Below, one piece after another: positions 1 through 28,956 of a DNA stretch of 31,983 nucleotides. Position 1 is the first letter of the stretch; the number at the start of each line of letters is the position of its first letter. The translations under genes and the position numbers were made by a program. The notes below the pieces were generated by a model. The model was given only the letters and a program-made list of their open reading frames with translations. It was not told the origin of the DNA and ran no database searches. The DNA comes from Vitrella brassicaformis CCMP3155 (lineage: Eukaryota > Protista > Chromerida): NCBI GenBank assembly GCA_001179505.1, contig CDMY01000675.1, positions 1 through 31,983 of the forward strand. The letters run 5' to 3'.

Positions 1-60
1 CCGATGCCGAGGCCGCTCGCATCTGGACGGCCATGCGTCACCGTCACCAAGCAGGGGGAC
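1..60 (+). pseudogene. 3' tail of a truncated F-box-like gene fragment (copy of 25020-25080); window starts inside it
   Basis: Frame 2 reads DAEAARIWTAMRHRHQAG, matching DAEAARQWAAMRHRHQAG at 25021-25075, which follows an F-box-like motif. Confidence 0.5.
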
Positions 61-1236
61 CTCCTTTTGTCTGAGAGGGAGAGAGGGCGGCCTTTATCGC
101 CGCTCTCCTCCATGTGCACTGGCTCGGGGGCAGCGGGCGTGTGGCTGGCCGTCGTGGTGGGGTGCGTCGGTATTCTTTATGTGTGTGTGCGTGTGTTGTG
201 TGTCTGGATGGATGAATGGTCAGTGTACTGGCAGTTTCTTCAGTACCGTAGCGCAGGCACCCACTCACTGGTGTGTGTAGTTCGCTGGATGGCTTTCCTT
301 CGCAAAGGTCACAGGTAGGGAGATTGACGCGGCATTGGTTGCCTGTAGATTCCGTGAGCACAGACAGACAGGCAGGAGAGAGAGAGGTGTGCACTACTTC
401 ACGGGCAAGTCTGTCTGCCCGTCTGCCCTCTCGTCTGTCTGCCTGGTGTGTGTGAGGCAGCTTGCTGTGCTGAACCGCACACAACGTGTCGTCTTTCTGT
501 GGTCGACGGAGGGCGAATTGACGGATGGATGGATGGTAGTCGGTGGCCAGTTTCCCTTCGCAAAGGTCACAGGCAGACTGACTGACTGACTGACAGACAG
601 GTATGCAGCAAGGAGTGTGCGGCATTTTATGTGTGTTGCCTGTCTGCTTTGGCGAGTGCATTTGTTCTGGTTGCTGCTTCACGTGGGCACAGGCAGGCAG
701 GCAGACAGGCCGAGGTGCACTGGCAATGAACGAACAGGTCTCCGTGGCTGCCTGTTTGTCTATCTGTCTGAGGCAGCTCGTTCGTTGAACCACACAGACG
801 TACATCCATCTCGTGTCATGTGTGTCACGCGCGTCGGTCGATGGGGGGCAATGGAGGAAGACAGGGTAGAGGAGAGAGGGCCACATCCGTCATGCAGCTG
901 CAACTGGAGAGATAGAGATAGAGGTGACTTGCTGCCTGTGCGGACAAACAGTGGCAGTGTCATTACATGGTGATGGCTGGGCGGCCACGGACCCGCTGGT
1001 CTGTTCAACACCGATAGATTATCCACACAAAGCCACACAAAGGCGCCCTGACAGCCCATCGTCACCACCAAAGTCAATTGAGATCTCCGCCCCCTCAGTG
1101 CATTTGAGTGATATTTGTCCTCTGAACGGTCTGTTTGTGCTCATCAAGTGTGCCCTCAAAGCCAAGGGGCGGGGAAATGGCCACAAATACTGTGCGAGCT
1201 GGATCGCCTCCCTTCGCGAAGAGAAAGAGAGTAGAA

Positions 1237-4200
1237 ATGGCGCCGCCTTACGTCGCCTGGCATCCTGCACCGATGCCCTGTCATCAACATTATTACTATC
1301 CGCCTGGACGGCCGGCACTTCCGCTCCTCAACCCGCCGGCGTCCTATGGCTACCACGAGGGGCTNNNNNNNNNNNNNNNNNNNNNNNNNNNNNNNNNNNN
1401 NNNNNNNNNNNNNNNNNNNNNNNNNNNNNNNNNNNNNNNNNNNNNNNNNNNNNNNNNNNNNNNNNNNNNNNNNNNNNNNNNNNNNNNNNNNNNNNNNNNN
1501 NNNNNNNNNNNNNNNNNNNNNNNNNNNNNNNNNNNNNNNNNNNNNNNNNNNNNNNNNNNNNNNNNNNNNNNNNNNNNNNNNNNNNNNNNNNNNNNNNNNN
1601 NNNNNNNNNNNNNNNNNNNNNNNNNNNNNNNNNNNNNNNNNNNNNNNNNNNNNNNNNNNNNNNNCCATTTGGGGTTTGTGGCTGCGCACTCGCGCCGGCC
1701 CCGCTGCGGCCCATCTACACGGCCACGGCCACCCCACCACTGATGGGACTGCAGCACCAGCAGGCTCCCCGCACGACGTCCGCCGCACCACGGCCACGGC
1801 CACCTATCCACCCCTGCGGACCGGGGCCTGCTGTTATCGTTGCTGGGCCGCTTAACGGCGGTCTTCAGCCGGGAGAGGGAGGGGTACATGTGCATGTGCA
1901 TGATTCATCCAGCCAGCAGCCCACCAGCCACCACCACGAGGCTGCTCCAGCTATGCCGCCCACTAGAGAGGAGGACCACCATGGGCAGGCCAGCAAGACA
2001 GAGGAGGGAGAGAGAGAGGAGAAGGCCAACACAGCCGCCCCCATGCCACCAGCAGCACCAGAGCTCCCCGAGCTGAGTAGCCAGCACCAGCAGCAGAGTG
2101 GAGAGGGCGACGAGCCGGCCAGTAGAGAGGAGGAGACGACGGCCAGCACGAGAGAGGAGGAGAAGAAGGACGAGAGGGAGGAGGAGAAGGACGAGAGGGA
2201 GGAGAAGGACAAGAGGGAGGATGCTGACGTAGCTGTTGCTGTTGACGAGAGTGTCCCCCGGCCAGCCGAGGAGGCACCACATGATAGTCTGCATGAGGAG
2301 GGCGTGTCTGCTGCGCCCGACTGTGACCAGGAGATGTCTAGCGGGTGAGGCCACACGCAGAGAGTGACACGTTGACCACACGACGCATCTCATCTGTTCT
2401 GTCTGTGCGTTTGTTGTTTCCCTTCATCCTCAGATTGTCGATTGCTGATGTGATTAACGAAGCCGCCCAGCCCACACCAGCCGCTGCACCTTCAGCACCT
2501 CAATCTCCCTCTCCCGCCCCCCACTACACACTGGTGCACAGCGGCCAGGCTGCGGACTGCCTACACCAGCGCGACTCAATCTCGTTTGCACACATCCAGG
2601 AAGGCAGCCGCAGCCTCTTGTGCGTCCGCAAGACCACCGCCACAATCAGACAGCGCACCGAGCCGCCCCAGCTCTACCTACTCTCCCACCACCATGCCAC
2701 CCGCACCAGACGCCCCACCGACCAGCTCCCTGACGCCGACCCATCGGCCGCCAACGGCAAGGGGATTATCCCCCCCATCCTGTGGCCGGTCGTCAAGGAG
2801 GCGCTCGGGGGCGAGTACGGGCGTGTGCAGGGTCTCTTCCGCAAGGGAGGGCCCGCATACTGCCTGTACTTGACCTCCAGCGAGGGGCGGCAAGGGGGCC
2901 ATGCCGCTGGCGGACAACTGGCTGTCATCGATGCCATCGACCCCCCCACCAGGCATCAGCGACAGGGCGGCTTCGTGTGTCTTCGTGTGCTCGCCTTCCC
3001 GCCTGGTGCCGCCTCAGTGCTGCCCCTGCTGGCGGCCAGGAAAGTGACCCACATCGACGGCAAGGAGGTGGGCACCATGGCGGGAATAGAGATGGCGAGC
3101 GGCAGCGAGATCGACAAGATCATGCGGGAGGAGCTGGGGCTGGATGAGGAGGAGAGGCAGCTGGCGAGGGTGCTAGGCACCATCGACCTGCTGGACAAAG
3201 CCATTCATGGGATGCATAATGTGAGCGGGGGCACATGACACTGACAGGAGAGGGGCAGATCAGACCACACGACGTGTGCACATGTGTCACCTTCTTTCTC
3301 TGGCTGATTGGTGTGTGTCTTGGTGTTCAGGTAGCCATTTTTTCTGTTGAGGAGGCGCAGAGGCGCGTCGAGGAGGCCGTGGCTGCTGCCGTTGCTGCCG
3401 GTATGTCGCCCGCGGACGCCATCAGCCCCGTGCAGCTGGCCGAGGAGCTTCCGCGCCCCTCGACCTTCGTGTCGACCGACGACGAGTCGTCGAACATCCT
3501 TGTTGGTTTCCAGCATGTGGTGTTTGACCTCGTCGGCGGCGGCCAGCGCACGCGCAAGCTGGTGGTGGCCGTGCCCACCCGCATCGATGCGGCCGGCAAG
3601 GAGAGGGGCAACATTGTCACGGGCGGCTGCAAGCCCTCTGCCTCGCCCATGGAGCAGGCCGTCCTCAACGACCTGTCCCATGCCCGCCGGGAGAGGGGCG
3701 GAGCCGCCTACAACCCCCAGACCGCCTACGTCGACCAGCTGTCGCCCCCCGGCCAGGCTCCTCCGTCTGTGGGGCAGTGGGCGCAGCGCAACCTCGACTA
3801 CCCCGGGTGGCAGCCATCGGACGACTACTGGAGCATGGGAGCCACAGCGCTCTCCATGCTCTCTGTGTCGTCCGGCTGCACCGCCCACGACCTCAAGCCG
3901 CCATTCTTCATCATGAAAGACGTTATGGAGGCGTATCAGAAGGACGGGGACGAGAAAGGCGGCGAGTGGACACCCGGCAAGTGGCACATGCGCGCCATGG
4001 ACCTCGCCGGCCTCGTCGCCGATGAGGACAGGGCGGCACAGCGGCAGATCGAGGACGCCATCGGAGGGGGGCAAGGAGAGGATGAGGAGGAGGAAGAGGA
4101 CGAGCCTGACGCGGGTGAGGAGGTTGGAGAGGGGCAAGGGGAGGGCGAGGAGGAGGGGGAGGAAGACGTCGAGCCTCGCCCGGACGAGTTGGTGGAGTCT

Positions 4201-4548
4201 GCTGTCAACCGCAACCTCTCGCGGTTCCACCAGGTCACCGACGACGTCCGGAAGGCCGTCTTTGGCCAGCTTCGCGCGGCACCAAGCCCCACCAGCGACA
4301 CGCAACAGCCATCGGCCAACCTGCAGCCCACCCCCGCCGAGAGGGCCGCCGTCGAGGCGCTCCACCGCAAGCAGGGCGACCGTCTCACGCTCGACATCGC
4401 CGCCAAGACCATCCTAGCAGAGACTATCATGAGCGTCAACCCATACGAGCGTACGGTGGCGATGGCGGAGCGGGCGGTGCGGATGCTGGTGTTGCTGGTG
4501 GAGCTGTGGGCTGGCGTGGTGTATCCCGTTCATGATGGCCTGCCGTGA
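1237..4548 (+). CDS. Divergent protein-kinase-fold protein (probable pseudokinase) with Pro/His/Glu-rich disordered N-terminus, copy A; exons 1237-2344 (contains N gap), 2434-3220, 3331-4548
   Basis: GT-AG introns 2345-2433 (phase 2) and 3221-3330 (phase 0) join the track ORFs in frame. Kinase landmarks occur in order: FRKGGPAYCL (Gly-loop-like, 2837), VCLR (VAIK-like, 2975), STDDESSNILV (HRDxKxxN-like, 3472), VVFDLVG (DFG-like, 3526), SPPGQ (APE-like), SDDYWSMG (subdomain IX, 3817). An in-frame upstream ATG at 1178 is an alternative start. Confidence 0.8.
1365..1664. other. Assembly gap (300 N placeholder)
   Basis: Exactly 300 N; the paralogous interval in copy B (26349-26704) is about 356 bp. 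Confidence 0.99.
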
Positions 4549-4938
4549 CTGACGAGTGTCTGGGCTGGAGGGGGTGCTGTGCGTGTGTGTGTGTGTGTAC
4601 AGTATGTGTGTGTATTTTTCTGTCCCCCCGACTGACTGAGTGTGGCTGGCATGGATACTCACGGTGGATCGATGGATGGATTTTTCTCGAGTATGTAATG
4701 GCGTACAGGACACTGACTGTGTGCGGTTCTTTTCTGTGGCCCGACGGACGGCTGCTGACTGAGAGCCGATCGGTCTGCACACACACACCCACGACACACA
4801 CGACACACACCTGGCTGCCCACTTACCTGTACAGTACCTGTGCATGTTGATTGTGTTGTTGGCTGGCCTGCTGATCGATCAGTCCACCTTACACTGATGA
4901 CTGACTTGCAGAGAGACAGACAGCACTCACTCACTGAC
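4444..4938. repeat. 495-bp direct repeat, apparently identical to 6043-6537
   Basis: Constant offset of 1599; the ORF track gives identical peptides for 4545..4850 and 6144..6449. The left copy ends exactly at the N gap. Confidence 0.93.
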
Positions 4939-5238
4939 NNNNNNNNNNNNNNNNNNNNNNNNNNNNNNNNNNNNNNNNNNNNNNNNNNNNNNNNNNNNNN
5001 NNNNNNNNNNNNNNNNNNNNNNNNNNNNNNNNNNNNNNNNNNNNNNNNNNNNNNNNNNNNNNNNNNNNNNNNNNNNNNNNNNNNNNNNNNNNNNNNNNNN
5101 NNNNNNNNNNNNNNNNNNNNNNNNNNNNNNNNNNNNNNNNNNNNNNNNNNNNNNNNNNNNNNNNNNNNNNNNNNNNNNNNNNNNNNNNNNNNNNNNNNNN
5201 NNNNNNNNNNNNNNNNNNNNNNNNNNNNNNNNNNNNNN
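4939..5238. other. Assembly gap (300 N placeholder)
   Basis: Exactly 300 N. Confidence 0.99.
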
Positions 5239-6147
5239 GGCTGCAAGCCCTCTGCCTCGCCCATGGAGCAGGCCGTCCTCAACGACCTGTCCTACGGCCG
5301 CCACGGGAGCGGCGGAGCCGCCGACAATCCCCAGACGGCCTACGTCGACCAGCTGTCGCCCCCCGGCCAGGCGCCTCCGTCTGTGGGGCAGTGGGCGCAG
5401 CGCTACCTCGACTACCCCGGGTGGCAGCCAGCGGACGACTACTGGAGCATGGGAGCCACAGCGCTCTCCATGCTCTCCCTGTCGTCCGGCTGCACCGCCC
5501 ACGACCTCAAGCCGCCATTCTTCGTCATGAAGGCGATGATGGAGGAATACCAGAGGCTCGGGGACGCGAGCGGCGACGAGTGGACACCCGGCAAGTGGCA
5601 CATTCGCGCCATGCAGCTTGCCAGCATCGTCGCCGACGCATGCGACGTTGGGCCGCGGCAGATGGAGGACGCCGACGCCTTCGGAGGGGGGCAATGGGAG
5701 GGCCAGGAGGGAGAGCAAGAGCAAGAGGACGAGCCTGACTCGGGTGAGGAGGTTGGAGCGGGGCAAGGGGAGGGCCAGGGGGAGCAAGACGACGAGCCTG
5801 AGGAGTACAAGTGGGTCAAGTCTTCTGTCAACCGCAACCTCTCGCGGTACCACTGGGTCGAGGACGACGTCAGGGAGGCCGCCTTCGGCCCACTGCGTGC
5901 GGAGCAGCCATCGGCCAGCCTGCAGCTCACCCCCGCCGAGAGGGCCGCCGTCGAGGCGCTCCACGGCAAGAAGGGCGACAGTTTCTCGCTCGAGAGTGCC
6001 GCCAAGGCCATCCTGGCGGAGACCATCGTGAGCGTCAGCCCGTACGAGCGTACGGTGGCGATGGCGGAGCGGGCGGTGCGGATGCTGGTGTTGCTGGTGG
6101 AGCTGTGGGCTGGCGTGGTGTATCCCGTTCATGATGGCCTGCCGTGA
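5239..6147 (+). CDS. Third pseudokinase paralog, 3' part of last exon only (5' end lost in gap)
   Basis: Open frame GCKPSASPMEQ...ADDYWSMGATALSML...VYPVHDGLP-stop, homologous to 3625-4548 and 28027-28956. Confidence 0.75.
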   Translation, partial: GCKPSASPMEQAVLNDLSYGRHGSGGAADNPQTAYVDQLSPPGQAPPSVGQWAQRYLDYPGWQPADDYWSMGATALSMLSLSSGCTAHDLKPPFFVMKAMMEEYQRLGDASGDEWTPGKWHIRAMQLASIVADACDVGPRQMEDADAFGGGQWEGQEGEQEQEDEPDSGEEVGAGQGEGQGEQDDEPEEYKWVKSSVNRNLSRYHWVEDDVREAAFGPLRAEQPSASLQLTPAERAAVEALHGKKGDSFSLESAAKAILAETIVSVSPYERTVAMAERAVRMLVLLVELWAGVVYPVHDGLP

Positions 6148-8095
6148 CTGACGAGTGTCTGGGCTGGAGGGGGTGCTGTGCGTGTGTGTGTGTGTGTACA
6201 GTATGTGTGTGTATTTTTCTGTCCCCCCGACTGACTGAGTGTGGCTGGCATGGATACTCACGGTGGATCGATGGATGGATTTTTCTCGAGTATGTAATGG
6301 CGTACAGGACACTGACTGTGTGCGGTTCTTTTCTGTGGCCCGACGGACGGCTGCTGACTGAGAGCCGATCGGTCTGCACACACACACCCACGACACACAC
6401 GACACACACCTGGCTGCCCACTTACCTGTACAGTACCTGTGCATGTTGATTGTGTTGTTGGCTGGCCTGCTGATCGATCAGTCCACCTTACACTGATGAC
6501 TGACTTGCAGAGAGACAGACAGCACTCACTCACTGACCGCCACCGACCATCATACACACACAGGGACGGCCATTGCTTTGTGGTGGTTTTTGCGGCCGTC
6601 CAGCGCACTCACTCACTCACTCGCTCACTTGACGTGTGCTGCCAGCAGCTGCCTCCTCTCTGACAGGCAGGCGTGTGTCCCTCCCGCACTCTCTGTGTGC
6701 ACACAGACTGTGCGCTTGTCGGCCCTTTGCCGCCGTCAGGTTGGTTTCGTTTTTGGCCCGCCGAGCAGCTGCGGATGGGTGGTTCCGCGATGACCACCCA
6801 TCCCTCCCTCCACTGCACTGCACTCCAGTGCACTGCCTGTAGGTGTAAGTGTGCAGGCAGTCATTCGCTCATGCGGTCCGCTGGCTGACAGTGAGTCGAG
6901 TCGGGCGATGGGGCCCAGCAGATGGATACGTACGGCTGTGCCTGCCTGCTGTCAACACGTGTGGGACTTCGCATGGCAATTGCAAGCAGACGGGGCAGGC
7001 AGGCAGGCAGGCAGGGGACACTAGTGTCAGGTTTCCCCACACAAATGGCACTCTCACATTAGTGTGTGGTCGCTGGATGGCGCGGCTTGTCATCTGCTAG
7101 GTGTCTGTGTACGTCTCTTTTCTGCGTGTTTGCGGTGTGGTGATATTTCTCTGTGTCTGTCGACACTGCTCAGTGATCATCTGCTGCCAATGTCAGCCAT
7201 TGCGAGTGTCCATCGACGCTTCCACGTCCCTTGTGCAGAGCCGAGAAGCCGGCCAGTGCCCGTGTCCGCAGTCGGCTGAGGAACATGTGTTTTGTACCTG
7301 CCAGCCATCCGCTTTTTCCTGTCCGTGTGCCTGTGGGCATGGGGAGCGCTCTCTGTGCACTGCATTGATTGGGTTGAGCGGCCACCGTCATTGACTTCAT
7401 TCAAACCGATACTGTCCGACCATTTTTACTCATTGCTCGTCATCACATCACCCACATCACCCACCCCACTCACTAGAGCGACCACAAGTGGACCTCAACA
7501 TCTCACTAACGCATCAAACGCTGCACAAAAAGGGAGCCACGAACTACTGATTGGCTGAAAGGCGCGTCCTCATCGCTCACTCGGCAAAGGCAGCGGCCGC
7601 TCTGTGTGGGCGGCGCCAGGGCGCACCCGCCGGCCGGATGAGAGAGCCATAAATGAACAGCGCACTTTTCTCTCGACAGCCTCCAATGCCCAACAAGGCT
7701 AGCTGCAATCCACAGACGCCTCTACACACCCGCAGCAATGCACTCCGCACCCTCGGCCATACTTGGACGCATTCTCCGCTCGCAGCTGGCGACCGCTCAT
7801 GCGCTCTCTTGTCGTCCTGGACCAGGAAGGCGTGGAATAAGAGAGGCAGGCCGTGCCACCCATCAACCCATCAACCAATCCTCTCCCGCATTGATTGCCC
7901 TGGTCGACGCAGCCAGCACTCATCTCATACAAACCATCAGCCTGCAACTACAACAGTGAGTGCAGTGCTGTCGATTGGGGTGAGTGGTGTGTGTGGACGA
8001 GAAGACCGCCCGTACCTCTGCTCTGGGAGTCTCCTCACGTCGATATGCCATCCTGTGTTGCCTCTCTGCCTGCTGCCTGCCACTGAGCGGCGTCG

Positions 8096-9158
8096 ATGGA
8101 CGCAAACACACCTCAAGAGAGCCACCTGCAGCAGCCACCCCAGACCATCCAGACACGCAGAGCAGCGTATGGTCATTGATCCTTGCCCCCCTCGCCCTTA
8201 TTTGCCTTCCCTCACCTCATCAGAGCCCCTCCAGCCACCCTCGCCGCCCCAGCAGGCTCCAACGAGGCCGCGGCAGCTCGCAGTGGCGATCAGAAGTGCC
8301 CATTTACGGCACAAAGGCCGGACTTCGTTAGAAGGTCGCCCCAAGCCCCCCACTGACCCCCAGAGGCGAGAAAGGCAGCGCCCGAGTGAGGAAATCGATC
8401 GGTCGTTCCGGGGGGCCGCAGTTGAGCACGATTCCACTTCAAGTCACCGTAGTCGACTGCACGAACCTCCCCATAGCTTTCAAATGCCCAAATCACCAAA
8501 CTCAGCAACAAAGCTCGCTGGCTAAGTTCGCAGTGCTGCGTTGAGACTTTCTCCTCTCCGTTCGATACGCTCAGGCACCATGAAGGACAGAGAACACTGC
8601 AGAGTGCGAAGCAAATTGCCATTGACCATTCCGATGGCTCTCTGCTGGAGAGCCCCACCACGGCCTTTGCCCCTCTCCAGAGGGTGTTCCCTGCAGCCTT
8701 GTGGTCTCTACGGCTGCTGTCTGCAGCCTACTGAGGCGCACTTTCAGACGAGGTACGGACTGACGAGCATTGGGAGTGACTCGGAGGGAAACACTGACAC
8801 ACTCTCCTCTCTCCGCTGCGCCGCATGGCTGCAGGTTCCTCGCTCAGGGTGCGCCCCCGCTGCTGCAGACGGGCGCCCTCGACCACCTGAGCCTACGGCC
8901 TCCAAATTTGAGGTGGTCTTTTCGGCGGCATGGCTTCTTCCACAGGGCCCTGCCGGAAAAGAGCCTTAAAGACACGACTGAATCTTCTGTAGGCCTTGCA
9001 GAGCGAGTGTAGAGGCCACTACGGTCAGACTGGCTGCCTCCGAAGCCCGCACTAGCTGAGCTGCCCTCTGCAGCGCCGTTTCCCATGTGTCTGATCCCTC
9101 GATGGGACGTTGCTGCTTTCCGCAGTGATTGTGTCCTTCACCATGTTGTGTGCTGCAG
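8096..9158 (+). CDS. Tentative small 5' exons of the 9159-13137 gene (e.g. 8096-8166, 8224-, 8575-8683, 8732-, 8834-)
   Basis: A phase-consistent chain of GT-AG junctions can be drawn (MDANTPQESHLQQPP.. / APPATLAAPAGSNEAAAARSGDQKCPF / HHEGQRTLQSAKQIAIDHSDGSLLESP / RFLAQGAPPLLQTGALDHLSLRPP), but it needs some unusually short introns and has no homology support. Confidence 0.3.
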
Positions 9159-12100
9159 GCGAAGGCCTCGCGTGATTTGACAATGGTGTCTTTGGTGGAG
9201 GGAAAGGAGGATCGAGAAACCTTAGCTAAGCTCGCAGACGCCTCTCCTCCCCCAAAGATCTCGGTGCCTGCTGTCGTGTATTGTGTTGTTCTGTCCTGGT
9301 GCAGTCGGCTTGTTACCCCGTGGGCCACCTGTGCCCCGCTGGGCACCTTTTGTCGCCTCATGGCGCCGCCTGACCCCCTCCCCCCGTCGCAGGCCTCCTC
9401 GATATGGATGGTGGGAGGCCACCCGTCTTGTGAGGTCGGCATCTATTGGCTGAGGGGTGACCAGCGCGAGGACATCATCATCTTCGTGAGGAAGGTGCTG
9501 GTGCTGGAGGGCCACCTGACGGCGACACGCTCACACTCGAGCAGACGACTGACCATCCTTCTCGAGTATGACGACCTCATGAAGCACATCAACGATTTCA
9601 AGCCCATGCTCTTCGGTCGCGCCCACAACACGGGTGTGCTGCTCACCGGCAAAGCGACAGAGGAGCTGGTGCAACAGGCCACCCGGCTGTACGAAGCGCT
9701 CCGTGTGCGGACCGTGGTGGTGCCGTGGCAGCAGCTGAGCCGTGCCGAGGCCCTCGAGACTTCCATCGAGGAACAGGCGAAGATGACAGTGCGTGTGGGC
9801 ATGTTGCTCGAGCCTGGCGAGATCTCCAAGGTGCCGCGCGTCCTAGGCGTCTCGTCGAAGCAGCTGGATTGGCCGGCCGACATCGGCCGATTCGCCAGCT
9901 TTGTCGTGATTGATGGGCGGGAGAAGGGTGCTGCCAGCAGCAAGGGAGGGGAGGGGGGGAGCGAGAGGCCGTCAGCCGTCTTGGAGACGGTCAGCACACA
10001 AGAGTCCAACCAGTACTCTCACCTAGCCCCGCCCCTGCCTGTGTGGCGGCTGATGCCGATGCACCGGTAAGGAAGAGGAACGAGACGCGCACCCCCACGC
10101 ATCCATCAGTGTGACGTGTTGGTCGTGTGTTGCCTTGGCAGCACGTCGGACGTCTTCGGCATTGCGTGTTTCGAGACCCAGTACGGCCACGGCTTGGCTG
10201 GCTTCTGCATGAGCGAAACGGCCCCCATCCTCGACAAAGCCATCGACGGTGAGACCACACACAACCCTCCCTCCACACCAACACATTACAACACACTCCA
10301 ACACGACGATTTCGTTTCTATCTGTGTGGTGTCAGACTTCGCTCTCGACCTGTCGACCTTCCCCCTCGCCCCCTCCCTCACCGACACACAGACCGACGAC
10401 ACCATGACCAGCACCACCACCGCCCCCACCAGCACCAGCACCAGCGCCCTGACCACCAGCCCCTCTCCCCCACCTCTCACATACACACCCACACTCGATC
10501 TCTCCGCCATGTGCAGCTTCGCGGCGCAGCGAAGAGCGGGAGAACAATCGGTGAAGCAGCTGACGACAGAGGCATTCGAGAGGGAGCTATACAACTATGT
10601 GGATGGCTACTGATACCGGTGATTCCTTCCGTCGGCGGCTGACGGGTCGACCCAACGACAAAGACAAAATATTCGACAGAGGTGAGCGCACACACACCGC
10701 CCATCGTCTCTCACTCCCTCCATCTGTCTGTCTGCCTGCCTGCCTGCCTGGCTGTGTGTCTGTGTGTGTTTGTAGTGGTTGAGAGTGGTGCGGCGAGGCT
10801 GTTCGCCGCTGACAACGAGCTCACCATCCTCCTCAACATCATCAACCGCACCGTGCCCGTGACTGACGACGAGCTGCAGCTGCACTGGCCGCACCTGACC
10901 GGCATCATCCACCTCAGGAACGGCGGCACCACCGGCGATGCCATCCTCTATCAGACCGTCAGGCTCGGCCTGCCCAACGTCTTGGCGACCATCTTCGAGA
11001 GGCTGAAGGTCCATATGCACGACAAGGTGCTGACCTGGGACACTATCGGCAGCGGTCGGCCGATTTCGACGGGGAACATCCTGCGGCTGTTGGGCCAGTC
11101 GACATCACCCCAACGTGAGCACCGCCTCGCTCCACACCACACACGTGCTATTCCATTTGGGTCGCGTTTTGTGCCAGATACGGAGCAGTCGACGAGCTCA
11201 TCGGTGGTCCCAACCACCACGACCACCACCACTGAGGCGAGCAAGCCAGGTGAGAGCCGGCACGTCGCTGCACGGGTGCCGTCATGTTGTCTTGTCCATT
11301 CAATGGATGTGTGCCGTCAGGTGCTGCTGGCTTGGTGGACAGCTCGGCTTCGTCGGCAGTCGTCCCCTCTGACCCCGACACCCACACCCACACCCACACC
11401 CACACAGACCACCAGCATCAGCAGCACTGCCGCCATCAGCGGCGTGGCGGCGGCCGCCCCCCTCTCCCTCCTCGTCCCCCAGCCCACCCACACATACGAC
11501 TTCTCCAGCGAGGACGTCATCAGCCAGGTGGCGAGCGGCCACGGATGGTCGGCACACGCGACTGCCAGCGTCAAGGACATCATCGCTGTGCGGCACTCTG
11601 GAGTGCGAGTGCTGGTCACGTCAAGGCCACACATGAGCTTCTTCCCCCCCAAGGGTAGCCGAGAGCCGTACGCACATGGGATGTTCCACATACACGACCA
11701 TGGTGTGATGGCCGTATCGTCCTACATCCAGAGGGACGGCAGGCGCGGCACGGATCGCAAATACATGGTCGCCTTGGAGGGCATCCAGCCGAGGCTCACG
11801 ACCCTAGAGGGTGAGTAAGAGAGATGGACCCAAGGGAGAAATTTCCTCACTTGTGCGTGTGCAGTGTCCTGTGCAGCGTTTCAGGCCTTCCTCGTCAGGG
11901 ACCAAATGTGGGACCAGACGGTGCCGACCGTCGGCAGCGAGGACGCATCCACCGCAGCCGGCCGTCGCGACCCGCAGGCCCCCCAGAGCATCGGCTTCCT
12001 GCGGGTGGCGGCCAACTTTGAGAACGGCATCGTGTCCGTGTGGGCCGACAGCGACACACCAAGCAAAGACCCCATCGGCCTGTCCTGGAGCAGCCGCATG

Positions 12101-13137: not shown

Positions 13138-13240
13138 TTTGACGGCCAGGGGATGGGGGTGGGTGGCGTGCTACAGTGGTAACGTAGATGCATACGTGGG
13201 CGGGTGGGCAGACGGGTGGTGCGTGGGGCTGTGGTGGGAG

Positions 13241-13624
13241 CTGCTGTGCCGGCGGTCGGTCGACCGTCTTCTTTCTTTCTCTGTCTGTCTGTGTGTGGTG
13301 GGTGAGCAAGAGTACCTGACGCACACACAACCAAAACACACACACACACACTCATATGGAAGACGACAGATGAGTGCCGTCTGTGTGGGCGTTTTGACAT
13401 GAGCGTGTGGGTGCTGGTGGCATGCAGATGGACGGGCCGTGGGGCCACACACACAAAGAGCCCCTGCACCGCTGTTTTGGCGTTTTGTTCACTCAAGGGG
13501 ACGGCTGATTTGACGGGATGGGGCGGGAGAGATCGGTACGGTGCGTGTGCGGAGGGCAATGGGTTCTCATCTGCTGGCTGGGAGGGCTGTGGCCGAGCAG
13601 TCCGTCTATTGTACGTGTGGATTG
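13241..13624. repeat. About 380-bp non-coding direct repeat, copy 1 (pairs with 15468-15850)
   Basis: Both run ctgctgtgccggcggtcggt...catatggaagacgacagatgagtgcc...gtacgtgtggattg with few differences. Confidence 0.9.
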
Positions 13625-15467
13625 TGCGTGTGCCTGGGTTGAGCTGTCTGCCTGCCTGCCTCATTCACTCACTCCTTCACTCACTCATTGCTGTAGCGGG
13701 GGGTATGGCTGCCGAAGATATTGCTTGCATGGTGCTCACATGGCCAGGCGCCCCACACGAAGCCGTCCGTGTGCGTGGCGCATGGTGAATGTGGCTGCTC
13801 ATAGGCCATCCCCATGTGTGCATCATGCCTGCGGCCCTCTCTTCCTCCGTGTCTGCCAATCGCTCGACACCCAGTGGACATGGTGTGTGTTGTGCTGGCT
13901 TGACCACTCACTGGCGATCGAGCTATGCTGCGGGGGGCGATGGGGGGCTGTGCGTGGAAGTTAGTGATGGAGGGGTCAGGCGAGGCTGGTGGGTGGGTGA
14001 GCGGGATTTGCTGTCCGTGGGGCTCAGTGGTGGGTTGGAAGGTGTGCACTGACTGACATGCCGGTGCGATCGGCCTGCTGTGTGTGTCACGGTGTGCGCG
14101 TGAGAGAGAGAGAGAGTTACACTACGGGCTGCTGCTTTTCTAAACGTTTAAGTGTCACTTACCTACAGTATGCGCGCAGAGAGCGACACACGGCCGACCC
14201 GACCCGACTTGACGTGGACCTGCTGGGTGTGGGTGTGTCGTGTGTGCGTGGGTGCAAGTGTGTGTGGCCAGGCGAGTGCTGCTCGCTATGTGTTTTGGTG
14301 CTGCCGCCTTTTTGCATTTGTGCAGTTGCCTGCTGATGGTGTGTGTATGGGTGTGAAGGGTCCCTCCCCTCCCCAGCTCAGCTTGTCGATCTATAAGCTC
14401 TAAGACTTATGCCCTTTATCCATTTTCCTTTTGCCTTTCCTCTGTTTGCCCATTTTATGATCAAAACGCTCAAGTCGCTCTGTGCGTGTATGCCTGCCTG
14501 CCTGCCTCGCTCACTCATTCATTCATTCACTCACTCACTGCGCATCTGCCTGGCTGCCCGTGTGTCTGTGTGTGGCTGTATGGCCGTTGACGTGGCGCCA
14601 CACACGTGGGGTCTGGTTTTGGTGGTGTGGATTGCTTGGCTGGGCGTTCTGCGCGTCTGCCTGCGTCTGCCTGACTCAAGGGGGATCAAGGATGGATGGA
14701 TGGATGGATGGTATGACAGCCACGTGCCCGACCGATAGCTATACAGACCATGATTGCTCACTCACCAAATGCCTGTTTGCTTGTAGGCACTGAGTGGCTG
14801 GGACGGGAGGGAGGGGAGAGGCAGGCTGCAGAAGGGCTGCCTGTTGCGTCATGGCGGATGGAGTGCACACACATTCACAGAGCGCTGTATGTGCAATGAA
14901 TGGATGGATGGATGGATGGAAGGACAGACGGACGGGTGCTGTGTGTGCGGATGCGGATCGATGCGGTTTTCTGTTTGCTGCCGTGTGCCTGTCGCCGTGG
15001 AAACGGCATAGAGGGGCACCTGTGACGCGACAGCAGGGACATCGACGGGTGCTGTGTTGTGTGCCTGATGCCCTTGGTGCGGGTTTTGGATGCGGCCCCC
15101 TCCCCCCCTCCAGCTTGCCCGTATGCCTGCCTGTTGCCATAGGCCGTCAGACTCATACGTACATCCATGAGTGTCCATCCAACTCGATCGACGGTCCATC
15201 CTGTCTCTTTCTTTTGCCTTTCTCCTCCTGTCTGCCTGTTGGTGCCCTTCATGTCATGGCAGCCTGACGCCGTCTTTTGCGGCCTTTTTCCTGCTGCCTT
15301 TGTGTCTTTTGTTGATGGGACCGAGGCGTTAACTAACGCACATGTGCCCATACGTATGCATCTGCATATTTGTCTGCACGCTCTATACGAGTAGCAAAGG
15401 CACCCCATGCCCTTTGCTCGCATGCCCGTGCCCGTGTTTGCCTTGTTTCTTTTTCTGTATAGGATGG

Positions 15468-15850
15468 CTGCTGTGCCGGCGGTCGGTCGGTCGACCGTCT
15501 TCTTTCTTTCTCTGTCTGTGTGTGTGTGGTGGGTGAGCAAGAGCACCTGACGCACACACACACAACCAAAACACACACACACACACTCATATGGAAGACG
15601 ACAGATGAGTGCCGTCTGTGTGGGCGTTTTGACATGAGCGTGTGGGTGCTGGTGGGTGGCAGATGGACGGGGCGTGGGGCCACACACACAAAGAGCCCCT
15701 GCTTCGCTGTTTTGGCGTTTTGTTCACTGAAGGGGACGGCTGATTTGACGGGATGGGGCGGGAGAGGTCGGTACGGTGCGTGTGCGGAGGGCAATGGGTT
15801 CACATCTGCTGGCTGTGGCCGAGCAGTCCGTGTATTGTACGTGTGGATTG
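15468..15850. repeat. About 380-bp non-coding direct repeat, copy 2
   Basis: Same sequence as 13241-13624. Confidence 0.9.
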
Positions 15851-15979
15851 CGACCGACCGATGCGCCCACAGTCATGGGTCATGGTGTTTGTATGGGCCC
15901 ACCCGTCGGGACTGCATATCTCTCTACCTATACAAGTAGCACTGACTCTCACCCAAGGAAGTGGGAGGGAATTTGCGTT

Positions 15980-17757
15980 TTGCCCGCCCCATTGCCTTTT
16001 TGTGCAATCCAGGCCGACAGCAGCCATGACCACTTGATGTGATTTGATCTCCTTCATTGCCCATCACTTGCTCCGATTGCCTGCCTGCATCGTTCGTGTG
16101 CGTGTGCCGACCTGTTGAATTCAGGACTCTGTCTGTCTGTCTGTCTGCCTTGCCTGTTTTGTGTCGACACGTGCCTGCGGCCCTCAAGTCTCGCTTCGTT
16201 TATGTGCGTCTGTCGGTGGTGCGTTGATGAAGGCAGCGGGCTGAGAGGTGACTCTCACACCCGCGTGCCTTTGTCGACACATCACCACAAACCTGATGCC
16301 GCGGTGCCTCCGTGTGTGTGCACGACGTCGGTGTGTGTGTGTGTCCTCTCTCCTTCTCTCCTCTCTCTCTCTCTCTCTCTCCCTATGTGTCCATTGAAGT
16401 GGTTTAAGGCCTTTATCGAGTGGGAAGGTTTAATATGACGGGCGACTTTGTTGAGAGCAGGCCCGGCCCCCTCGTGCAAAGCACATGGCTGGCCCGGGCT
16501 GAGGTCTTTTCTCTTTCTTTCGTCTGGCCGTGTGTGAAATAGGAAGCGAGAATCACAGCCAGCTTATCGACCACCCAGTCACTTCGTCTGTTCGTCTGTC
16601 TGCCTGTCTGTCTGTATTGCCCTCACCTCGCACCGCACACCCAAGCCCCTCTGACTGAACAGGCAGACAGACAGACAGACAGCTGGAGTCGAGTTGAGCT
16701 AAGCCCCCTCTCTCCCTACTACACAGATGTTTTCACGTGCGTACCGTCCGCGTGTATCGGTGGGCGTTGTCTGTCTGTCTGTCTGCCTTGCCTGTTTTGT
16801 GTCGACACGTGCCTGCGGCCTTCAAGTCTCTCTTCGTTTATGTGCGTCTGTCGGTGGTGCGTCGATGAAGGCAGCGGGCTGAGAGGTGACTCTCACACCC
16901 GCGTGCCTTTGTCGACACATCACCACAAACCTGATGCCCCGGTGCCTCCGTGTGTCCATACGTGTGTGTTGGACATATATTCCAGGCCTATATGTCCAGT
17001 ATGTTCATGTGTGTGGATGTGATGTGATGGCAGTGAGGCGCTCCGTCAGCACGGCTGGCTGGATGCGATTGAGTTTGTTGATACATGTATGAATGAATGG
17101 GGTGCATGCAAAGCACGTCGTCCCCCTCTCCCCCCTTCTATCTACGCTGCCTTTGTCTTCTCAATGTACGTACTCTCTGTCTATGTGCCCCTTGATTGGT
17201 CGTGCGTCGGTGGTTGGGCATGTGCGTGAGAGCTGTGCACAGCCCCCCACCCCACCAGCCATCCATCGACGCACCAACCAATATTCAACAGATGTCCACT
17301 TGCCTTTTATCCAGTGAGATTATTTTCAATTGAGACGATGGCCGACTGTGTTGTGCATGTGTCTGTCGGTGTGCAGCGGTATTCCTTCCGACTGATGGGT
17401 GCACACAGATGTGTTCGCCCTCCTGGTTCGCAAGAGATGCGATGCACCGACAGACACACGCACGCTCAGATGGCCGATAAATATGTACATCAGACGATCC
17501 GAAACAAGTGAGAGAGACCATATGCATATCGATGGACCGACATCATTCGATGCCAGCAGATGTCTCTCAGTCAAGAGCAGCCACGCACTCCCCCATCAAA
17601 ACGCATCGATAAAGTGGATGGCGGAGCACATTGTCACTGAGGCGTGTCGACAGACACAAAGACGTCTCTATGGTTACGCATTCTCTATAGTTGATGGACC
17701 TTGATGAATCGTTTATTGGCCAAACCAATCGGTCGACACTTGGCACAATTTCCCATT
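15980..17757. repeat. About 1.8-kb non-coding repeat unit, copy 1 (pairs with 18211-19565); contains an internal duplicate (16131-16320 = 16771-16955)
   Basis: 15982-16530 matches 18211-18780 and 17112-17757 matches 18785-19565. The block gtcgacacgtgcctgcggcc...caccacaaacctgatgc occurs three times. Confidence 0.88.
16345..16382. repeat. (CT)n microsatellite
   Basis: cctctctccttctctcctctctctctctctctctctccc. Confidence 0.9.
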
Positions 17758-17760
17758 CAG

Positions 17761-17910
17761 CTAAGTCTGCATGCGCTCCATCAGCACACCAGCCGTCACC
17801 ACAGCCGACTTCGCCCGGCAGGTGGCTCGCACACATACGAGCTCACGGACGAGGAGGGAGGGGATAATGCGCCTGCGCCACAGCTCATCGGGCACCAAAT
17901 CAGAGATCGC
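17761..17910 (-). pseudogene. F-box-like exon fragment, truncated (5' end in gap, stop at 17763-17761)
   Basis: Minus frame reads AISDLVPDELWRRRIIPSLLVRELVCVRATCRAKSAVVTAGVLMERMQT-stop, fitting the F-box consensus LPxE(L/I)xxxIxxxLxxxxLxxxxxxCR. Confidence 0.6.
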
Positions 17911-24640: not shown

Positions 24641-24722
24641 GATGATGACAGCACTCGAGAGGCGGCTCCCTTGATGCAGCCGCCGCAACGACCGTTTCTT
24701 TCTCTCCTTGGTCTGTGTGCAG

Positions 24723-26220: not shown

Positions 26221-28956
26221 ATGGCGCCGCCGTGCGTCGCCTGGCATCCAGCACAGATGCCCTGTCATCCTCATTATTACTATCCGCCTGGACGGTCGGC
26301 ACTTCCTCTCCTCAACACGCCGGCGTCCTATGGCTACGACGAGGGGCTGTCGCGGCACTACTATCCCGTCCCCGCCACCGCGCCCGACGCCCCTGAGGGC
26401 CAGCAAACTGAGATGTGCGCCCCCTGTGAGGCTGTGGTCAACGCCGCCCGCGCTATGGACCAATGGATCCGAGAGCAAGTCGCGAAGATCGGCGACTCGC
26501 TGCGGCAGTGCGGGTGCTGCCTCGTCAGCGGACCAGAGAGCCAAGAGGCTCAGCGGCCGAGCGGTCCCTCGGCCGACGACCAGCTGACAGGCACCTCGCC
26601 GACCACACCTCACTGGGGGAACGCTGCACACCCCCGGGCTCTGCAGCAGCGCGACGGCCCTCCTGCTGCATCCTACCCCCTTCCCCATCCCCTTCCCCAC
26701 CCCCACCATATGGAGTTTGTGGCTGCGCACTCGCGCCCGGCCCCGCTGCGGCCCATCTACCCGGCTACGGCCACCCCACCACTGATGGGACCGCAGCACC
26801 AGCAGGCTCCCCGCACGATGTCCGCCGCACCACGGCCACGGCCACCTATTTACCCCTGCGGACCGGGGCCTGCTGTAATCGTTGCTGGGCCGCTTAACGG
26901 CGGTCTTCAGCCGGGAGAGGGAGGGGTACATGTGCATGTGCATGATTCATCCAGCCAGCAGCCCACCAGCCACCACCACGAGGCTGCTCCAGCCATGCCG
27001 CCCACTAGAGAGGAGGACCACCACGGGCAGGCCACGACGACAGAGGAGGACAAGGTCGAGAGGGAGGAGGAGAGGGAGGATGCTGACGTAGCTGTTGCTG
27101 TTGACGAGAGTGTCCCCCGGCCAGCCGAGGAGGCACCACATGATAGTCTGCATGAGGAGGGCGTGTCTGCTGCGCCCGACTGTGACCAGGAGATGTCTAG
27201 CGGGTGAGGCCACACGCAGAGAGTGACACGTTGACCACAAGACGCATCTCATCTGTTCTGTCTGTGCGTTTGTTGTTTCCCTTCATCCTCAGATTGTCGA
27301 TTGTTGACCTGCATAGCGAAGCCGCCCAGCCCACACCAGCCGCTGCACCTTCAGCACCACTCTCTCCCTCTCCCGCCCCCCACTACACAATGGTGCACAG
27401 CGGCCAGGCTGCGGACTGCCTACACCAGCGCGACTCAATCTCGTTTGCACACATCCAGGAAGGCAGCCGCAGCCTCTTGTGCGTGCGCAAGACCACCGCC
27501 ACAACCAGACAGCGCACCGAGCCGCCCCAGCTCTACCTACTCTCCCACCACCATGCCACCCGCACCAGACGCCCCGCCGACCAGCTCCCTGACGCCGACC
27601 CATCGGCCGCCCACGGCAAGGGGATTATCCCCCCCATCCTGTGGCCGGTCGTCAAGGAGGCGCTCGGGGGCGAGTACGGGCNNNNNNNNNNNNNNNNNNN
27701 NNNNNNNNNNNNNNNNNNNNNNNNNNNNNNNNNNNNNNNNNNNNNNNNNNNNNNNNNNNNNNNNNNNNNNNNNNNNNNNNNNNNNNNNNNNNNNNNNNNN
27801 NNNNNNNNNNNNNNNNNNNNNNNNNNNNNNNNNNNNNNNNNNNNNNNNNNNNNNNNNNNNNNNNNNNNNNNNNNNNNNNNNNNNNNNNNNNNNNNNNNNN
27901 NNNNNNNNNNNNNNNNNNNNNNNNNNNNNNNNNNNNNNNNNNNNNNNNNNNNNNNNNNNNNNNNNNNNNNNNNNNNNNNNNCGCATCGATGCAGCCGGCA
28001 AGAAGAGGGGCAACATTGTCACGGGCGGCTGCAAGCCCTCTGCCTCGCCCATGGAGCAGGCCGTCCTCAACGACCTGTCCTATGGCCGCCACGGGAGCGG
28101 CGGAGCCGCCGACAACCCCCAGACGGCCTACGTCGACCAGCTGTCGCCCCCCGGCCAGGCTCCTCCGTCTGTGGGGCAGTGGGCGCAGCGCTACCTCGAC
28201 TACCCCGGGTGGCAGCCATCGGACGACTACTGGAGCATGGGAGCCACAGCGCTCTCCATGCTCTCCCTGTCGTCCGATTGCACCGCCCACGACCTCAAGC
28301 CGCCATTCTTCATCATGAAGGCGATGATGAAATTCTTCATCATGAAGGCGATGATGAAGACCTACCAGGAGCTCGGGGACGCGAGCGACGACGAGTGGAC
28401 ACCCGGCAAGTGGCACATGCGCGCCGTGCAGCTCGCCAGCATCGTCGCCGACGCATGCGACGTTGGGCCGCGGCAGATGGAGGACGCCGACGGAGGGGGC
28501 CAATGGGAGGGCCAGGAGGGAGAGCAAGAGCAAGAGGACGAGCCTGACTCGGGTGAGGAGGTTGGAGCGGGGCAAGGGGAGGGCCAGGGGGAGCACGACG
28601 ACGAGCCTGAGGAGTACAAGTGGGTCAAGTCTGCTGTCAACCGCAACCTCTCGCGGTACCACTGGGTCGAGGACGACGTCAGGGAGGCCGTCTTTGGCCC
28701 ACTGCGTGCGGAGCAGCCATCGGCCAGCCTGCAGCCCACCCCCGCCGAGAGGGCCGCCGTCGAGGCGCTCCACAGCAAGAAGGGCGACAGTTTCACGCTC
28801 GACATTGCCGCCAAGACCATCCTGGCAGAGACCATCGTCAGCCCCAGCCCATACGAGCGCACGGTGGCGATGGCGGAGCGGGCGGTACGGATGCTGGTGT
28901 TGCTGGTGAAGCTGTGGGCTGGCGTGGTGTATCCCACCCAGGATGGCCTGCCATGA
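26221..28956 (+). CDS. Pseudokinase paralog, copy B; exon 1 26221-27203, exon 2 from 27293, gap hides exon 2 end, intron 2 and start of exon 3, last exon to 28956
   Basis: Open exon 1 (MAPPCVAWHP...DQEMSS), the same phase-2 intron (27204-27292), and an intact C-lobe SDDYWSMGATALSML...YPTQDGLP-stop. An in-frame ATG at 26173 is an alternative start. Confidence 0.8.
27682..27981. other. Assembly gap (300 N placeholder)
   Basis: The flanks map to 2821 and 3581 of copy A, implying a true size near 760 bp. Confidence 0.99.

What the first reader, a model, noticed from the sequence alone, without database searches (positions are those of the whole stretch)
1237..4548. Multi-copy ~1,000-aa pseudokinase family hidden by splicing
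Seen: three ORFs in different frames splice into one protein with all kinase subdomains in order. Compared with the canonical ePK consensus (established), the catalytic motifs are altered: GxGxxG becomes RKGGPAY, the beta3 VAIK lysine becomes R (VCLR), HRDxKxxN becomes STDDESSN (Asp and Asn kept, His/Arg lost, Lys to Glu), DFG becomes DLV, and APE becomes PPG, while DxWSxG survives. There is a long insert between DFG and APE and an acidic Glu-rich insert in the C-lobe. Frames stay open in all three copies although most neighbours are frameshifted, which suggests selection. Inference: an undescribed pseudokinase family expanding by local duplication, conceptually like the Toxoplasma ROP5 array but with no evident signal peptide; it has a disordered N-terminus and a possible KRKR nuclear localisation signal just before the ATG.
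Basis: partly seen in the sequence, partly recalled or inferred. Interest (0 to 1): 0.75.

Follow-up and report, generated by a model that had tools for sequence, protein, structure and literature searches.

The report
Vitrella-only gene family, possibly kinase-like
This is a real three-exon gene of the alga Vitrella brassicaformis, one of about a dozen fast-evolving copies found in no other organism, and it may be an extremely diverged protein-kinase look-alike, but only one short stretch resembles kinases significantly and its fold could not be predicted.

Summary
Window 1237-4548 is a GT-AG spliced three-exon gene, and the junctions 2344/2434 and 3220/3331 are in frame. The public 798-aa Vitrella brassicaformis CCMP3155 model (P0003, "uncharacterized protein") uses exactly these junctions.

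The gap at 1365-1664 lies inside exon 1. With 300 N the two sides are in different frames. Continuity is shown only by ungapped paralogues: window copy 3 and a copy on contig C243.

The window holds one full copy, one C-terminal fragment and one copy broken by a gap. About a dozen further loci lie on four or five other contigs, several with stops or frameshifts. A profile search of 1.84 billion protein representatives found only five Vitrella proteins.

The pseudokinase reading is plausible but unproven:
- Pfam, NCBIfam and a PDB profile search gave no kinase hit, even at E<=10.
- Two AlphaFold runs were unusable (pLDDT 39 and 46).
- My profile-profile test against 13 bacterial and phage Hanks kinases found only a 26-column alphaF-like match (P=7e-4, about 9 SD above shuffles).
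- The catalytic-loop match and the collinear motif chain are not significant.

The "DLV" Asp is not conserved, whereas an invariant I-D-A-A-G is the better DFG candidate. dN/dS is 0.35-1.0, so constraint is weak.

The parts
1237..1364 (+). Exon 1, part before the assembly gap.
   Evidence: It is 84% identical to codons 1-50 of the translation of window 26200-27204, the copy 3 exon 1 query.
1365..1664 (.). Assembly gap (300 N, length only estimated) inside exon 1.
   Evidence: The flanks are in different frames at the nominal length. Ungapped paralogues show about 120 codons here in one open frame.
1665..2344 (+). Exon 1, part after the gap. It encodes a low-complexity N-terminal region rich in Pro, His and Glu. 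The public model P0003 starts at the ATG at 1953.
2345..2433 (+). Intron 1 (GTGAGG...CCTCAG, 89 nt).
   Evidence: The junction is identical in P0003.
2434..3220 (+). Exon 2 (262 codons), the candidate N-lobe. Motifs: GGPAYCL 2846-2866, VCLRV 2975-2989, PPGAASVL 2999-3022, AGIEMASG 3080-3103, IDLLDKAIHGMHN 3182-3220.
   Evidence: Paralogues are 37-42% identical and conserve GGPxYSL, FxxL[RK]V, FPPG and AGIxMAxG.
3221..3330 (+). Intron 2 (GTGAGC...GTTCAG, 110 nt). Its position is conserved in diverged paralogues.
3331..4548 (+). Exon 3 (405 codons plus stop), the candidate C-lobe.
5239..6147 (+). Copy 2: only the last 302 codons of exon 3, following gap 4939-5238. It is annotated publicly as a 294-aa protein (P0001).
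26221..28956 (+). Copy 3: complete ungapped exon 1 (26221-27203), intron (27204-27292), exon 2 start (27293-27681), gap 27682-27981, then exon 3 from codon 84 (27982-28956). The public model P0006 (732 aa) splices across the gap.

Best explanation
This is a real, spliced, protein-coding gene of Vitrella brassicaformis. It belongs to a species-restricted family that grows and decays by local and dispersed duplication. The family has roughly a dozen loci, some intact, many fragmentary or broken.

The protein has three parts: a long low-complexity N-terminal region (exon 1), a roughly 670-residue conserved part (exons 2 and 3), and a copy-specific acidic insert.

The conserved part is most likely a very diverged derivative of the eukaryotic protein-kinase fold. 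My proposed mapping is inferred, not shown:
- Gly-rich loop: GGPxY[SC]L.
- beta3: [AC]L[RK]V, which is Arg in this gene.
- Catalytic loop: [SA]TDxxxxNILV.
- beta7-beta8 hairpin: unusually long.
- DFG equivalent: I-D-A-A-G.
- APE equivalent: P-x-E.
- A variable insert of about 40 residues.
- alphaF: DDxW[ST]xG.
- Subdomain XI: the Arg in an R-T motif.

The beta3 Lys is replaced by Arg, the Gly loop carries a Pro, and HRD has lost its His and Arg. The window protein would therefore count as a predicted pseudokinase, acting as a binding or scaffolding module rather than a phosphotransferase. Because the catalytic Asp, the Asn and the DAAG Asp are family-invariant, residual or atypical nucleotide-dependent activity cannot be excluded.
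For: Gene and splicing: the GT-AG joins are in frame and the public model P0003 has the same junctions. Vitrella gene models were built with RNA-seq intron evidence (PMC4501334).

Family: copies lie on C675, C364, C243, C759, C179 and C911.

Restriction to Vitrella: the exon 3 profile found only 5 proteins, all from this genome's family, among 1.84e9 representatives. Word searches found only Vitrella proteins.

Kinase-like signals:
- hhalign of the family profile against 13 diverse Hanks kinases gave a 26-column alphaF match with P=7e-4. Its score was 34.0 against 14.7+-2.1 (maximum 18.5) for 24 column-shuffled templates.
- The best hit upstream of alphaF is the catalytic loop, in the register that puts the family's invariant D and N on the kinase D and N. 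This held with both the Hanks profile and the YegI profile.
- Weak collinear hits fall on the Gly loop and on APE.
- ESM Atlas neighbours of exon 3 are mostly Pkinase clusters, score 0.91.
- AlphaFold secondary structure, although from low-confidence models, follows the order strand, loop, long hairpin, DAAG, short strand, helix starting at P-x-E, helix starting at DDxW.
- The residues invariant across 33-45% identical paralogues are the ones that map to kinase core positions.
Against: - No Pkinase or related hit appeared in Pfam or NCBIfam at E<=10, for single exons or for full-length models.
- Family profiles found no kinase among 177,635 PDB sequences at E<=10. The top hits were antibody heavy chains ending in DYWGQG, which shows how easily the DxW..G motif arises.
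- AlphaFold2 gave mean pLDDT 39 (full length) and 46 (exon 3 paralogue). Foldseek had no hit at E<=0.001 and no kinase domain among the weak listed rows.
- In the restricted test the catalytic-loop hit scored 14.8 against shuffles of 12.4+-1.9; the six highest of 60 shuffles scored 15.1-16.9, which I estimate as p about 0.1.
- With relaxed gap costs the collinear chain scored 55.0 against 41.5+-8.1 for block-shuffled templates, and 1 of 24 shuffles reached it.
- The positive control YegI, which Pfam also misses, reached 98.8% probability over 196 columns in the same test. This family reached only 25.6%.
- The distance from beta3 to the hinge is too short for a full five-stranded N-lobe (my own count).
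- Exon 2 had no ESM Atlas neighbours.
Confidence: 0.5

Rival explanations
1. This is an orphan family with a fold unrelated to kinases. It would be a fast-evolving, lineage-specific protein in which a few short motifs (D-x4-N, DAAG, DxWxxG) resemble kinase signatures by chance. The reader, and I, aligned them because we were looking for them.
For: - All HMM-level searches were negative.
- AlphaFold failed twice.
- Only one 26-column segment is significant, and the remaining motif matches are at noise level.
- The same DxW..G motif pulled antibody chains out of the PDB.
- The N-lobe spacing does not fit.
- dN/dS is 0.35-1.0, which is typical of young orphan families.
Against: - The alphaF-like hit has P=7e-4 in a single pre-specified comparison and lies about 9 SD above shuffles.
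- The ESM Atlas neighbours are kinase fragments.
- The top-scoring upstream hits land on the catalytic loop with two independent kinase profiles.
- The family-invariant residues and the predicted secondary-structure order fit the C-lobe topology.
Confidence: 0.35
2. This is an active atypical kinase or nucleotide-dependent enzyme rather than a dead one. The fold would be kinase-like and the chemistry retained through the invariant catalytic-loop Asp and Asn and the DAAG Asp. Arg, or Lys in some paralogues, in beta3 would contact the nucleotide, as in kinases that moved or replaced canonical residues.
For: - D and N of [SA]TDxxxxN and the D of IDAAG are invariant in all paralogues, down to 33% identity.
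- The C759 paralogue has Lys at the beta3 position.
- Paralogues have Glu or Asp in PPG[ED]ASVL, where the alphaC Glu could lie.
Against: - The fold itself is unproven.
- In the window gene the candidate alphaC acidic residue is Ala, and beta3 is Arg.
- The Gly loop carries a Pro.
- Purifying selection is weak, which fits an enzyme poorly.
Confidence: 0.1
3. The copy number is largely an assembly artefact: uncollapsed haplotypes or misjoined repeats in a gap-rich scaffold. On this reading it is one or two genes rather than an expanding family.
For: - All three window copies touch 300-N gaps.
- Copy 2 is a fragment that begins right after a gap, 390 bp past copy 1's stop.
- Related loci on C364, C243 and C759 also contain gaps, and the C364 copy and one C243 copy (668 kb) lie at the ends of their contigs.
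Against: - The copies differ by 4-15% at synonymous sites inside the window.
- Paralogues on other contigs are only 33-45% identical in protein, with a conserved intron position. This is real paralogy, far beyond allelic divergence.
Confidence: 0.05

Closest known systems
Eukaryotic protein kinase (Hanks-type) superfamily, Pfam PF00069 / clan PKinase
   Same: - An alphaF-like D-x-W-[ST]-x-G helix is significantly similar in profile-profile comparison.
- Collinear candidates exist for the Gly loop, beta3, the catalytic loop D-x4-N, a DFG-like D-A-A-G, a P-x-E and a subdomain-XI Arg.
- The predicted secondary-structure order fits the C-lobe.
   Different: - There is no HMM match at all.
- beta3 has Arg in place of Lys.
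- HRD has become [SA]TD, and DFG has become DAAG.
- The beta7-beta8 hairpin would be about 18 residues longer.
- There is an insert of about 40 residues before alphaF, and an acidic insert in the C-terminal half.
- The stretch from beta3 to the hinge is too short for beta4 plus beta5.
- AlphaFold does not recover the fold.
Toxoplasma ROP5 / ROPK pseudokinase arrays
   Same: Tandem and dispersed multi-copy, fast-evolving, possibly non-catalytic kinase-like genes in an alveolate. This is an analogy only.
   Different: - No sequence relation was found: the profile search returned no apicomplexan protein.
- I saw no signal peptide or hydrophobic N-terminus. This rests on reading the sequence, not on a prediction tool.
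- Vitrella is a free-living alga, so a host-directed effector role has no basis.
E. coli YegI family (bacterial kinase that Pfam misses)
   Same: It is a kinase-type domain that is invisible to Pfam hmmscan. I used it here as a positive control for the profile-profile test.
   Different: YegI aligns to Hanks kinases over 196 columns at 98.8% probability. The Vitrella family aligns over 26 columns at 25.6%, so it is far more diverged, or unrelated.
Other Vitrella pseudokinase-like families noted by this scan (s1-218492, s1-205699, s1-248783)
   Same: Same genome, and the same theme of lineage-specific, multi-copy, degenerate kinase-like genes.
   Different: These are on other pieces of the genome. 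A look-up by sequence found no overlap with this family. I did not test whether any of them is the same family.

Membership tests
Protein kinase superfamily (PF00069 / PKinase clan) | Significant match to a kinase profile HMM | tested here: not met
   Pfam and NCBIfam hmmscan of the exons and of the full-length models P0003, P0004 and P0006 gave no kinase family at E<=10. Family profiles against PDB sequences found no kinase at E<=10.
Protein kinase superfamily (PF00069 / PKinase clan) | Bilobal kinase fold | tested here: inconclusive
   AlphaFold2 gave mean pLDDT 39.3 (P0003 with a 14-row alignment) and 46.0 (P0004 with 10 rows). Foldseek against the PDB gave no match at E<=0.001. The models are too poor to count for or against.
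Protein kinase superfamily (PF00069 / PKinase clan) | alphaF motif D-x-W-[SA]-x-G in a hydrophobic helix | tested here: met
   hhalign gave 26 columns, P=7e-4, score 34.0 against shuffles of 14.7+-2.1. The motif is conserved in all paralogues.
Protein kinase superfamily (PF00069 / PKinase clan) | Catalytic loop Asp and Asn (HRDxxxxN) | tested here: inconclusive
   [SA]TDxxxxNILV is invariant in D and N. It is the top hit upstream of alphaF against two kinase profiles. Its score of 14.8 is not significant: column shuffles gave 12.4+-1.9 with a maximum of 16.9. His and Arg are absent.
Protein kinase superfamily (PF00069 / PKinase clan) | beta3 Lys (VAIK) | tested here: not met
   The window gene has Arg (VCLRV, 2975-2989). 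Paralogues have Arg, except one on C759 with Lys. The alignment to VAIK appears only with relaxed gap costs.
Protein kinase superfamily (PF00069 / PKinase clan) | Gly-rich loop GxGxxG | tested here: not met
   The motif is GGPxY[SC]L, with Pro at the second Gly position and Ser or Cys at the third. The hhalign hit to the Gly loop has P=0.25.
Protein kinase superfamily (PF00069 / PKinase clan) | DFG Asp | tested here: inconclusive
An invariant I-D-A-A-G follows a predicted long hairpin, 31 residues after the Asn. hhalign did not align it to DFG.
Pseudokinase (kinase fold lacking at least one of the beta3 Lys, catalytic Asp or DFG Asp) | Kinase fold plus loss of a catalytic residue | tested here: inconclusive
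   The loss of the beta3 Lys holds if the mapping is right. The fold is not shown.
ROPK / ROP5 family | Sequence homology to coccidian rhoptry kinases, and a signal peptide | tested here: not met
   The profile search of 1.84e9 representatives returned only 5 proteins of this Vitrella family. The N-terminus MAPPYVAWHP... has no hydrophobic stretch.

The most novel reading that the evidence does not exclude
The family is a genuine derivative of the protein-kinase fold that has drifted beyond the reach of HMMs and AlphaFold. It would have a reduced N-lobe, a beta7-beta8 hairpin lengthened by about 18 residues, and DAAG in place of DFG, yet keep the three catalytic acidic/amide residues invariant. 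That would make it a new, chromerid-born branch of atypical, possibly still nucleotide-using, kinase-like proteins evolving by birth and death.
Probability: 0.2. Interest if true: 0.6.

Novelty: new variant of a known kind. Interest (0 to 1): 0.4.

Why it matters
If the kinase ancestry is real, this family marks how far a kinase domain can diverge while keeping its core acidic residues. It would be a natural test case for fold-recognition methods, because HMMs and AlphaFold2 both fail on it.

It would also add to the picture of Vitrella as a genome rich in lineage-specific degenerate kinase families next to the apicomplexans, where pseudokinase arrays became virulence factors.

If the ancestry is not real, this is an ordinary fast-evolving orphan family, and a reminder that ordered short motifs can mimic kinase subdomains.

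Tried and rejected
Negative or unusable results:
- Pfam and NCBIfam scans of every exon and of the public models found nothing relevant.
- A profile search of PDB sequences returned only antibody chains and a copper-binding protein, at E 0.07-0.4.
- AlphaFold2 on the full public model and on a compact exon 3 paralogue gave low confidence both times. Foldseek on both models gave nothing. I did not run VIA-align, because nearly all residues are below pLDDT 60.
- The family profile against the organism's own genome at E<=10 found only family members and no ordinary kinase.

Problems with alignments and controls:
- A first combined alignment (A3) and a trial including P0006 misplaced fragments. 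I rejected them in favour of A5.
- Shuffling the query alignment crashed hhalign because the fragments' end gaps became internal gaps. I shuffled the template instead.

Getting kinase sequences by reference:
- The phage 933W stk gene then seeded a tblastn search that gave 12 diverse plasmid-borne Hanks kinases.

Readings I rejected:
- A C-terminal transmembrane helix, because the hydrophobic end carries conserved charged residues.

Every full-length analysis used P0003, the public model returned by a search.
Full report
**Origin of the window.** The window is contig C675 of a 72.7-Mb assembly in 1064 contigs. Public proteins identical to its ORFs are named as Vitrella brassicaformis CCMP3155. 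The assembly size and scaffold number match the published genome (PMC4501334). It is a GC-rich eukaryotic sequence with short GT-AG introns.

**Gene structure.**
- Exon 1 ends at 2344, in ...AGCGG|GTGAGG.
- Intron 1 ends at 2433, in ...CCTCAG|A. The split codon GG|A keeps the frame into LSIADV...
- Exon 2 ends at 3220, in ...AAT|GTGAGC.
- Exon 3 starts at 3331, after ...GTTCAG|GTA, in phase 0.

A profile search returned the public 798-aa model of this very locus, P0003, an "uncharacterized protein" with no Pfam domain on record. Vitrella models were predicted with RNA-seq intron hints, but I could not inspect reads for this gene. The exon 2/3 junction (intron 2) sits at the same place in paralogues only 38-45% identical in protein, which argues for a real intron. 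Single-exon searches were done by reference, and full-length work used P0003.

**The gap.** The stretch 1365-1664 lies within exon 1. The piece from the ATG at 1237 to 1364 is in frame 1 and the piece 1665-2344 is in frame 0. With 300 N they do not connect in frame. As the N-run length is only an estimate, copy 1 cannot answer the question. In copy 3 of the window (ATG 26221 to donor 27203) the homologous region is ungapped and forms one open frame. The same holds for C243:649298-650167 (88% identical). By alignment about 120 codons are missing in copy 1. P0003 starts at an ATG after the gap (1953), so the public model is N-terminally truncated. Both copy 1 and copy 3 have an in-frame ATG 17-20 codons further upstream with no stop in between.

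**Copies.**
- A self-comparison shows that 1-4938 is repeated at 25020-29371 with 85-96% identity. Region 5239-7256 matches 28027-30104.
- Copy 2 is only the last 302 codons of exon 3. It begins right after a gap that follows copy 1's 3' flank.
- Copy 3 lacks the second half of exon 2 and the first 83 codons of exon 3, which fall in a gap.
- A fourth close copy (91-96% identical) lies at the end of contig C364.
- Diverged paralogues (33-45% identical) lie on C243 (613-625 kb, 653 kb, 668 kb), C759 and C179, with a fragment on C911.
- Several of these carry in-frame stops or frameshifts.

Pairwise Nei-Gojobori dN/dS is 0.35-1.0 among the close copies and 0.4-0.8 among the old ones. Constraint is therefore weak, which looks more like birth-and-death turnover than strong selection.

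**Distribution.** The exon 3 family profile, scored against 1.84 billion representative proteins, hit five proteins. All belong to this Vitrella family. Two word-based searches agreed. No paper in the library couples Vitrella with this family.

**Is it a kinase? Sequence models.** They say no, or not detectably.
- Pfam and NCBIfam gave no kinase hit at E<=10 for any exon or full-length model.
- Family profiles found no kinase among all PDB sequences at E<=10. The top hits were antibody heavy chains ending in DYWGQG.

**Is it a kinase? Structure prediction.** It was inconclusive.
- P0003 with a checked 14-row alignment gave mean pLDDT 39.3.
- A compact exon 3 paralogue, P0004, gave 46.0, with only the last 100 residues above 60.
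- Foldseek found nothing with either model.

This is absence of a usable model, not evidence of a different fold.

**Profile-profile test.** I assembled, by reference, 12 diverse plasmid-borne Hanks kinases plus the phage 933W Stk, and ran hhalign locally.
- The positive control was E. coli YegI, a kinase that Pfam also misses. It aligned over 196 columns at 98.8% probability.
- The Vitrella family aligned over only 26 columns. GWQPxDDxWtvGxtALsmL aligned to the kinase alphaF motif with P=7e-4 and probability 26%.
- That score, 34.0, stands against 14.7+-2.1 (maximum 18.5) for 24 column-shuffled templates and 13.3 for the reversed template.
- Upstream of it the best hit places [SA]TDxxxxNILV on HRDxKPxNIL. 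The YegI profile gives the same register. Its score of 14.8 is not significant: 60 column shuffles gave 12.4+-1.9, and the six highest scored 15.1-16.9, which I estimate as p about 0.1.
- With relaxed gap-extension costs the alignment chains Gly loop, beta3, alphaD/E, catalytic loop and alphaF in order. Its score of 55.0 is matched by 1 of 24 block-shuffled templates (41.5+-8.1).
- ESM Atlas feature neighbours of exon 3 are mostly Pkinase clusters at score 0.91 with low shared-feature counts. By the tool's own calibration this is a lead only. Exon 2 had no neighbours.

**What the paralogues say about the motifs**.
- Conserved across the family: GGPxY[SC]L; FxxL[RK]V (Lys in one C759 copy, Arg elsewhere); FPPG[EDA]xSxL; AGIxMAxGxxI; IDLLxK...MH; [SA]TDxxxxNILV; IDAAGxxxGxxxT; [PA]xE[TQ]xxxN; VG[EQ]WA; YPGWQPxDDxW[ST]xG; and an R-T followed by ...LV..W...YP at the C-terminus.
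- A better mapping takes the invariant I-D-A-A-G as the DFG equivalent. It lies 31 residues after the Asn instead of the usual 13. Both AlphaFold runs predict the intervening residues as one long beta hairpin, in the place of beta7-beta8.
- P-x-E lies 22 residues after that Asp, which is the usual DFG-APE distance. A variable insert of about 40 residues comes next, and then alphaF.
- Under this mapping the catalytic Asp, the Asn and the metal-binding Asp are all invariant. The losses are the beta3 Lys (Arg), the HRD His and Arg, and a canonical Gly loop.
- The stretch from beta3 to the putative hinge has 30-36 residues. That is too short for alphaC plus beta4 and beta5, so the N-lobe would be atypical.

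**Weighing.**
- That this is a real, spliced, multi-copy, Vitrella-restricted gene is well supported.
- I rate descent from a kinase fold at a little over one half. It rests on one significant local similarity plus several individually weak, mutually dependent hints, against uniformly negative HMM results and AlphaFold failure.
- Given a kinase fold, the window protein meets the usual bioinformatic definition of a pseudokinase, because it lacks the beta3 Lys. The invariant acidic residues keep an atypical activity possible.
- The ROP5 comparison is an analogy of genomic arrangement only. There is no homology, no signal peptide and no host.

**Earlier notes of this scan.** They list other Vitrella pseudokinase-like families on other pieces of the genome. 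A look-up by sequence found no overlap with this one. I did not test whether any of them is the same family. They did not change my reading.

Noticed in passing
L053 (G000:C243:646500-656400), positions 2796-6347 and 6634-7437: Three tandem copies of the exon 1-like N-terminal module, 67-88% identical to the window's, sit just upstream of an exon 2 that is only about 38-40% identical. The disordered N-terminal exon seems to be exchanged or homogenised between otherwise old paralogues, by gene conversion or exon shuffling. Assembly error in a gap-rich region is the alternative.
   Followed up: partly
window 1177-1239 and 26170-26223: Both copy 1 and copy 3 have an in-frame ATG 17-20 codons upstream of the MAPP... 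start, with no stop in between. A conserved K-R-K-R motif (AKRKRVEM / SKRKREIEM) lies in that stretch, so the true start and a possible nuclear-localisation-like motif are open.
   Followed up: partly
window 13240-19565: A second set of local direct repeats is unrelated to the gene family: 13240-13624 matches 15467-15850 (93%), 15982-16531 matches 18215-18781 (83%), and 17110-17757 matches 18782-19565 (89-98%). The spacing is about 1.7-2.2 kb, around another 300-N gap at 17911-18210.
   Followed up: no
window 1-1364 and 25020-26348: The roughly 1.2 kb upstream of the gene is duplicated together with it (90-91% identical). The repeat unit is therefore the gene plus its 5' flank (duplicated from window position 1, the scaffold edge), not the coding region alone. 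The 218-aa ORF at 24638-25294 lies mostly just upstream of the second copy of this unit and overlaps its first 275 bp; it has no Pfam match.
   Followed up: partly
window 9129-11818, 20590-21243, 30871-31760: The longer ORFs between and beyond the copies have no Pfam match at E<=0.1.
   Followed up: partly
L057 (E. coli K-12 NC_000913.3) 9040-10986: The experimentally named kinase YegI gets no Pkinase hit from Pfam hmmscan at E<=0.01, yet it aligns to a 13-sequence Hanks profile at 98.8% with hhalign. This is a useful calibrator for 'kinase invisible to Pfam'.
   Followed up: yes
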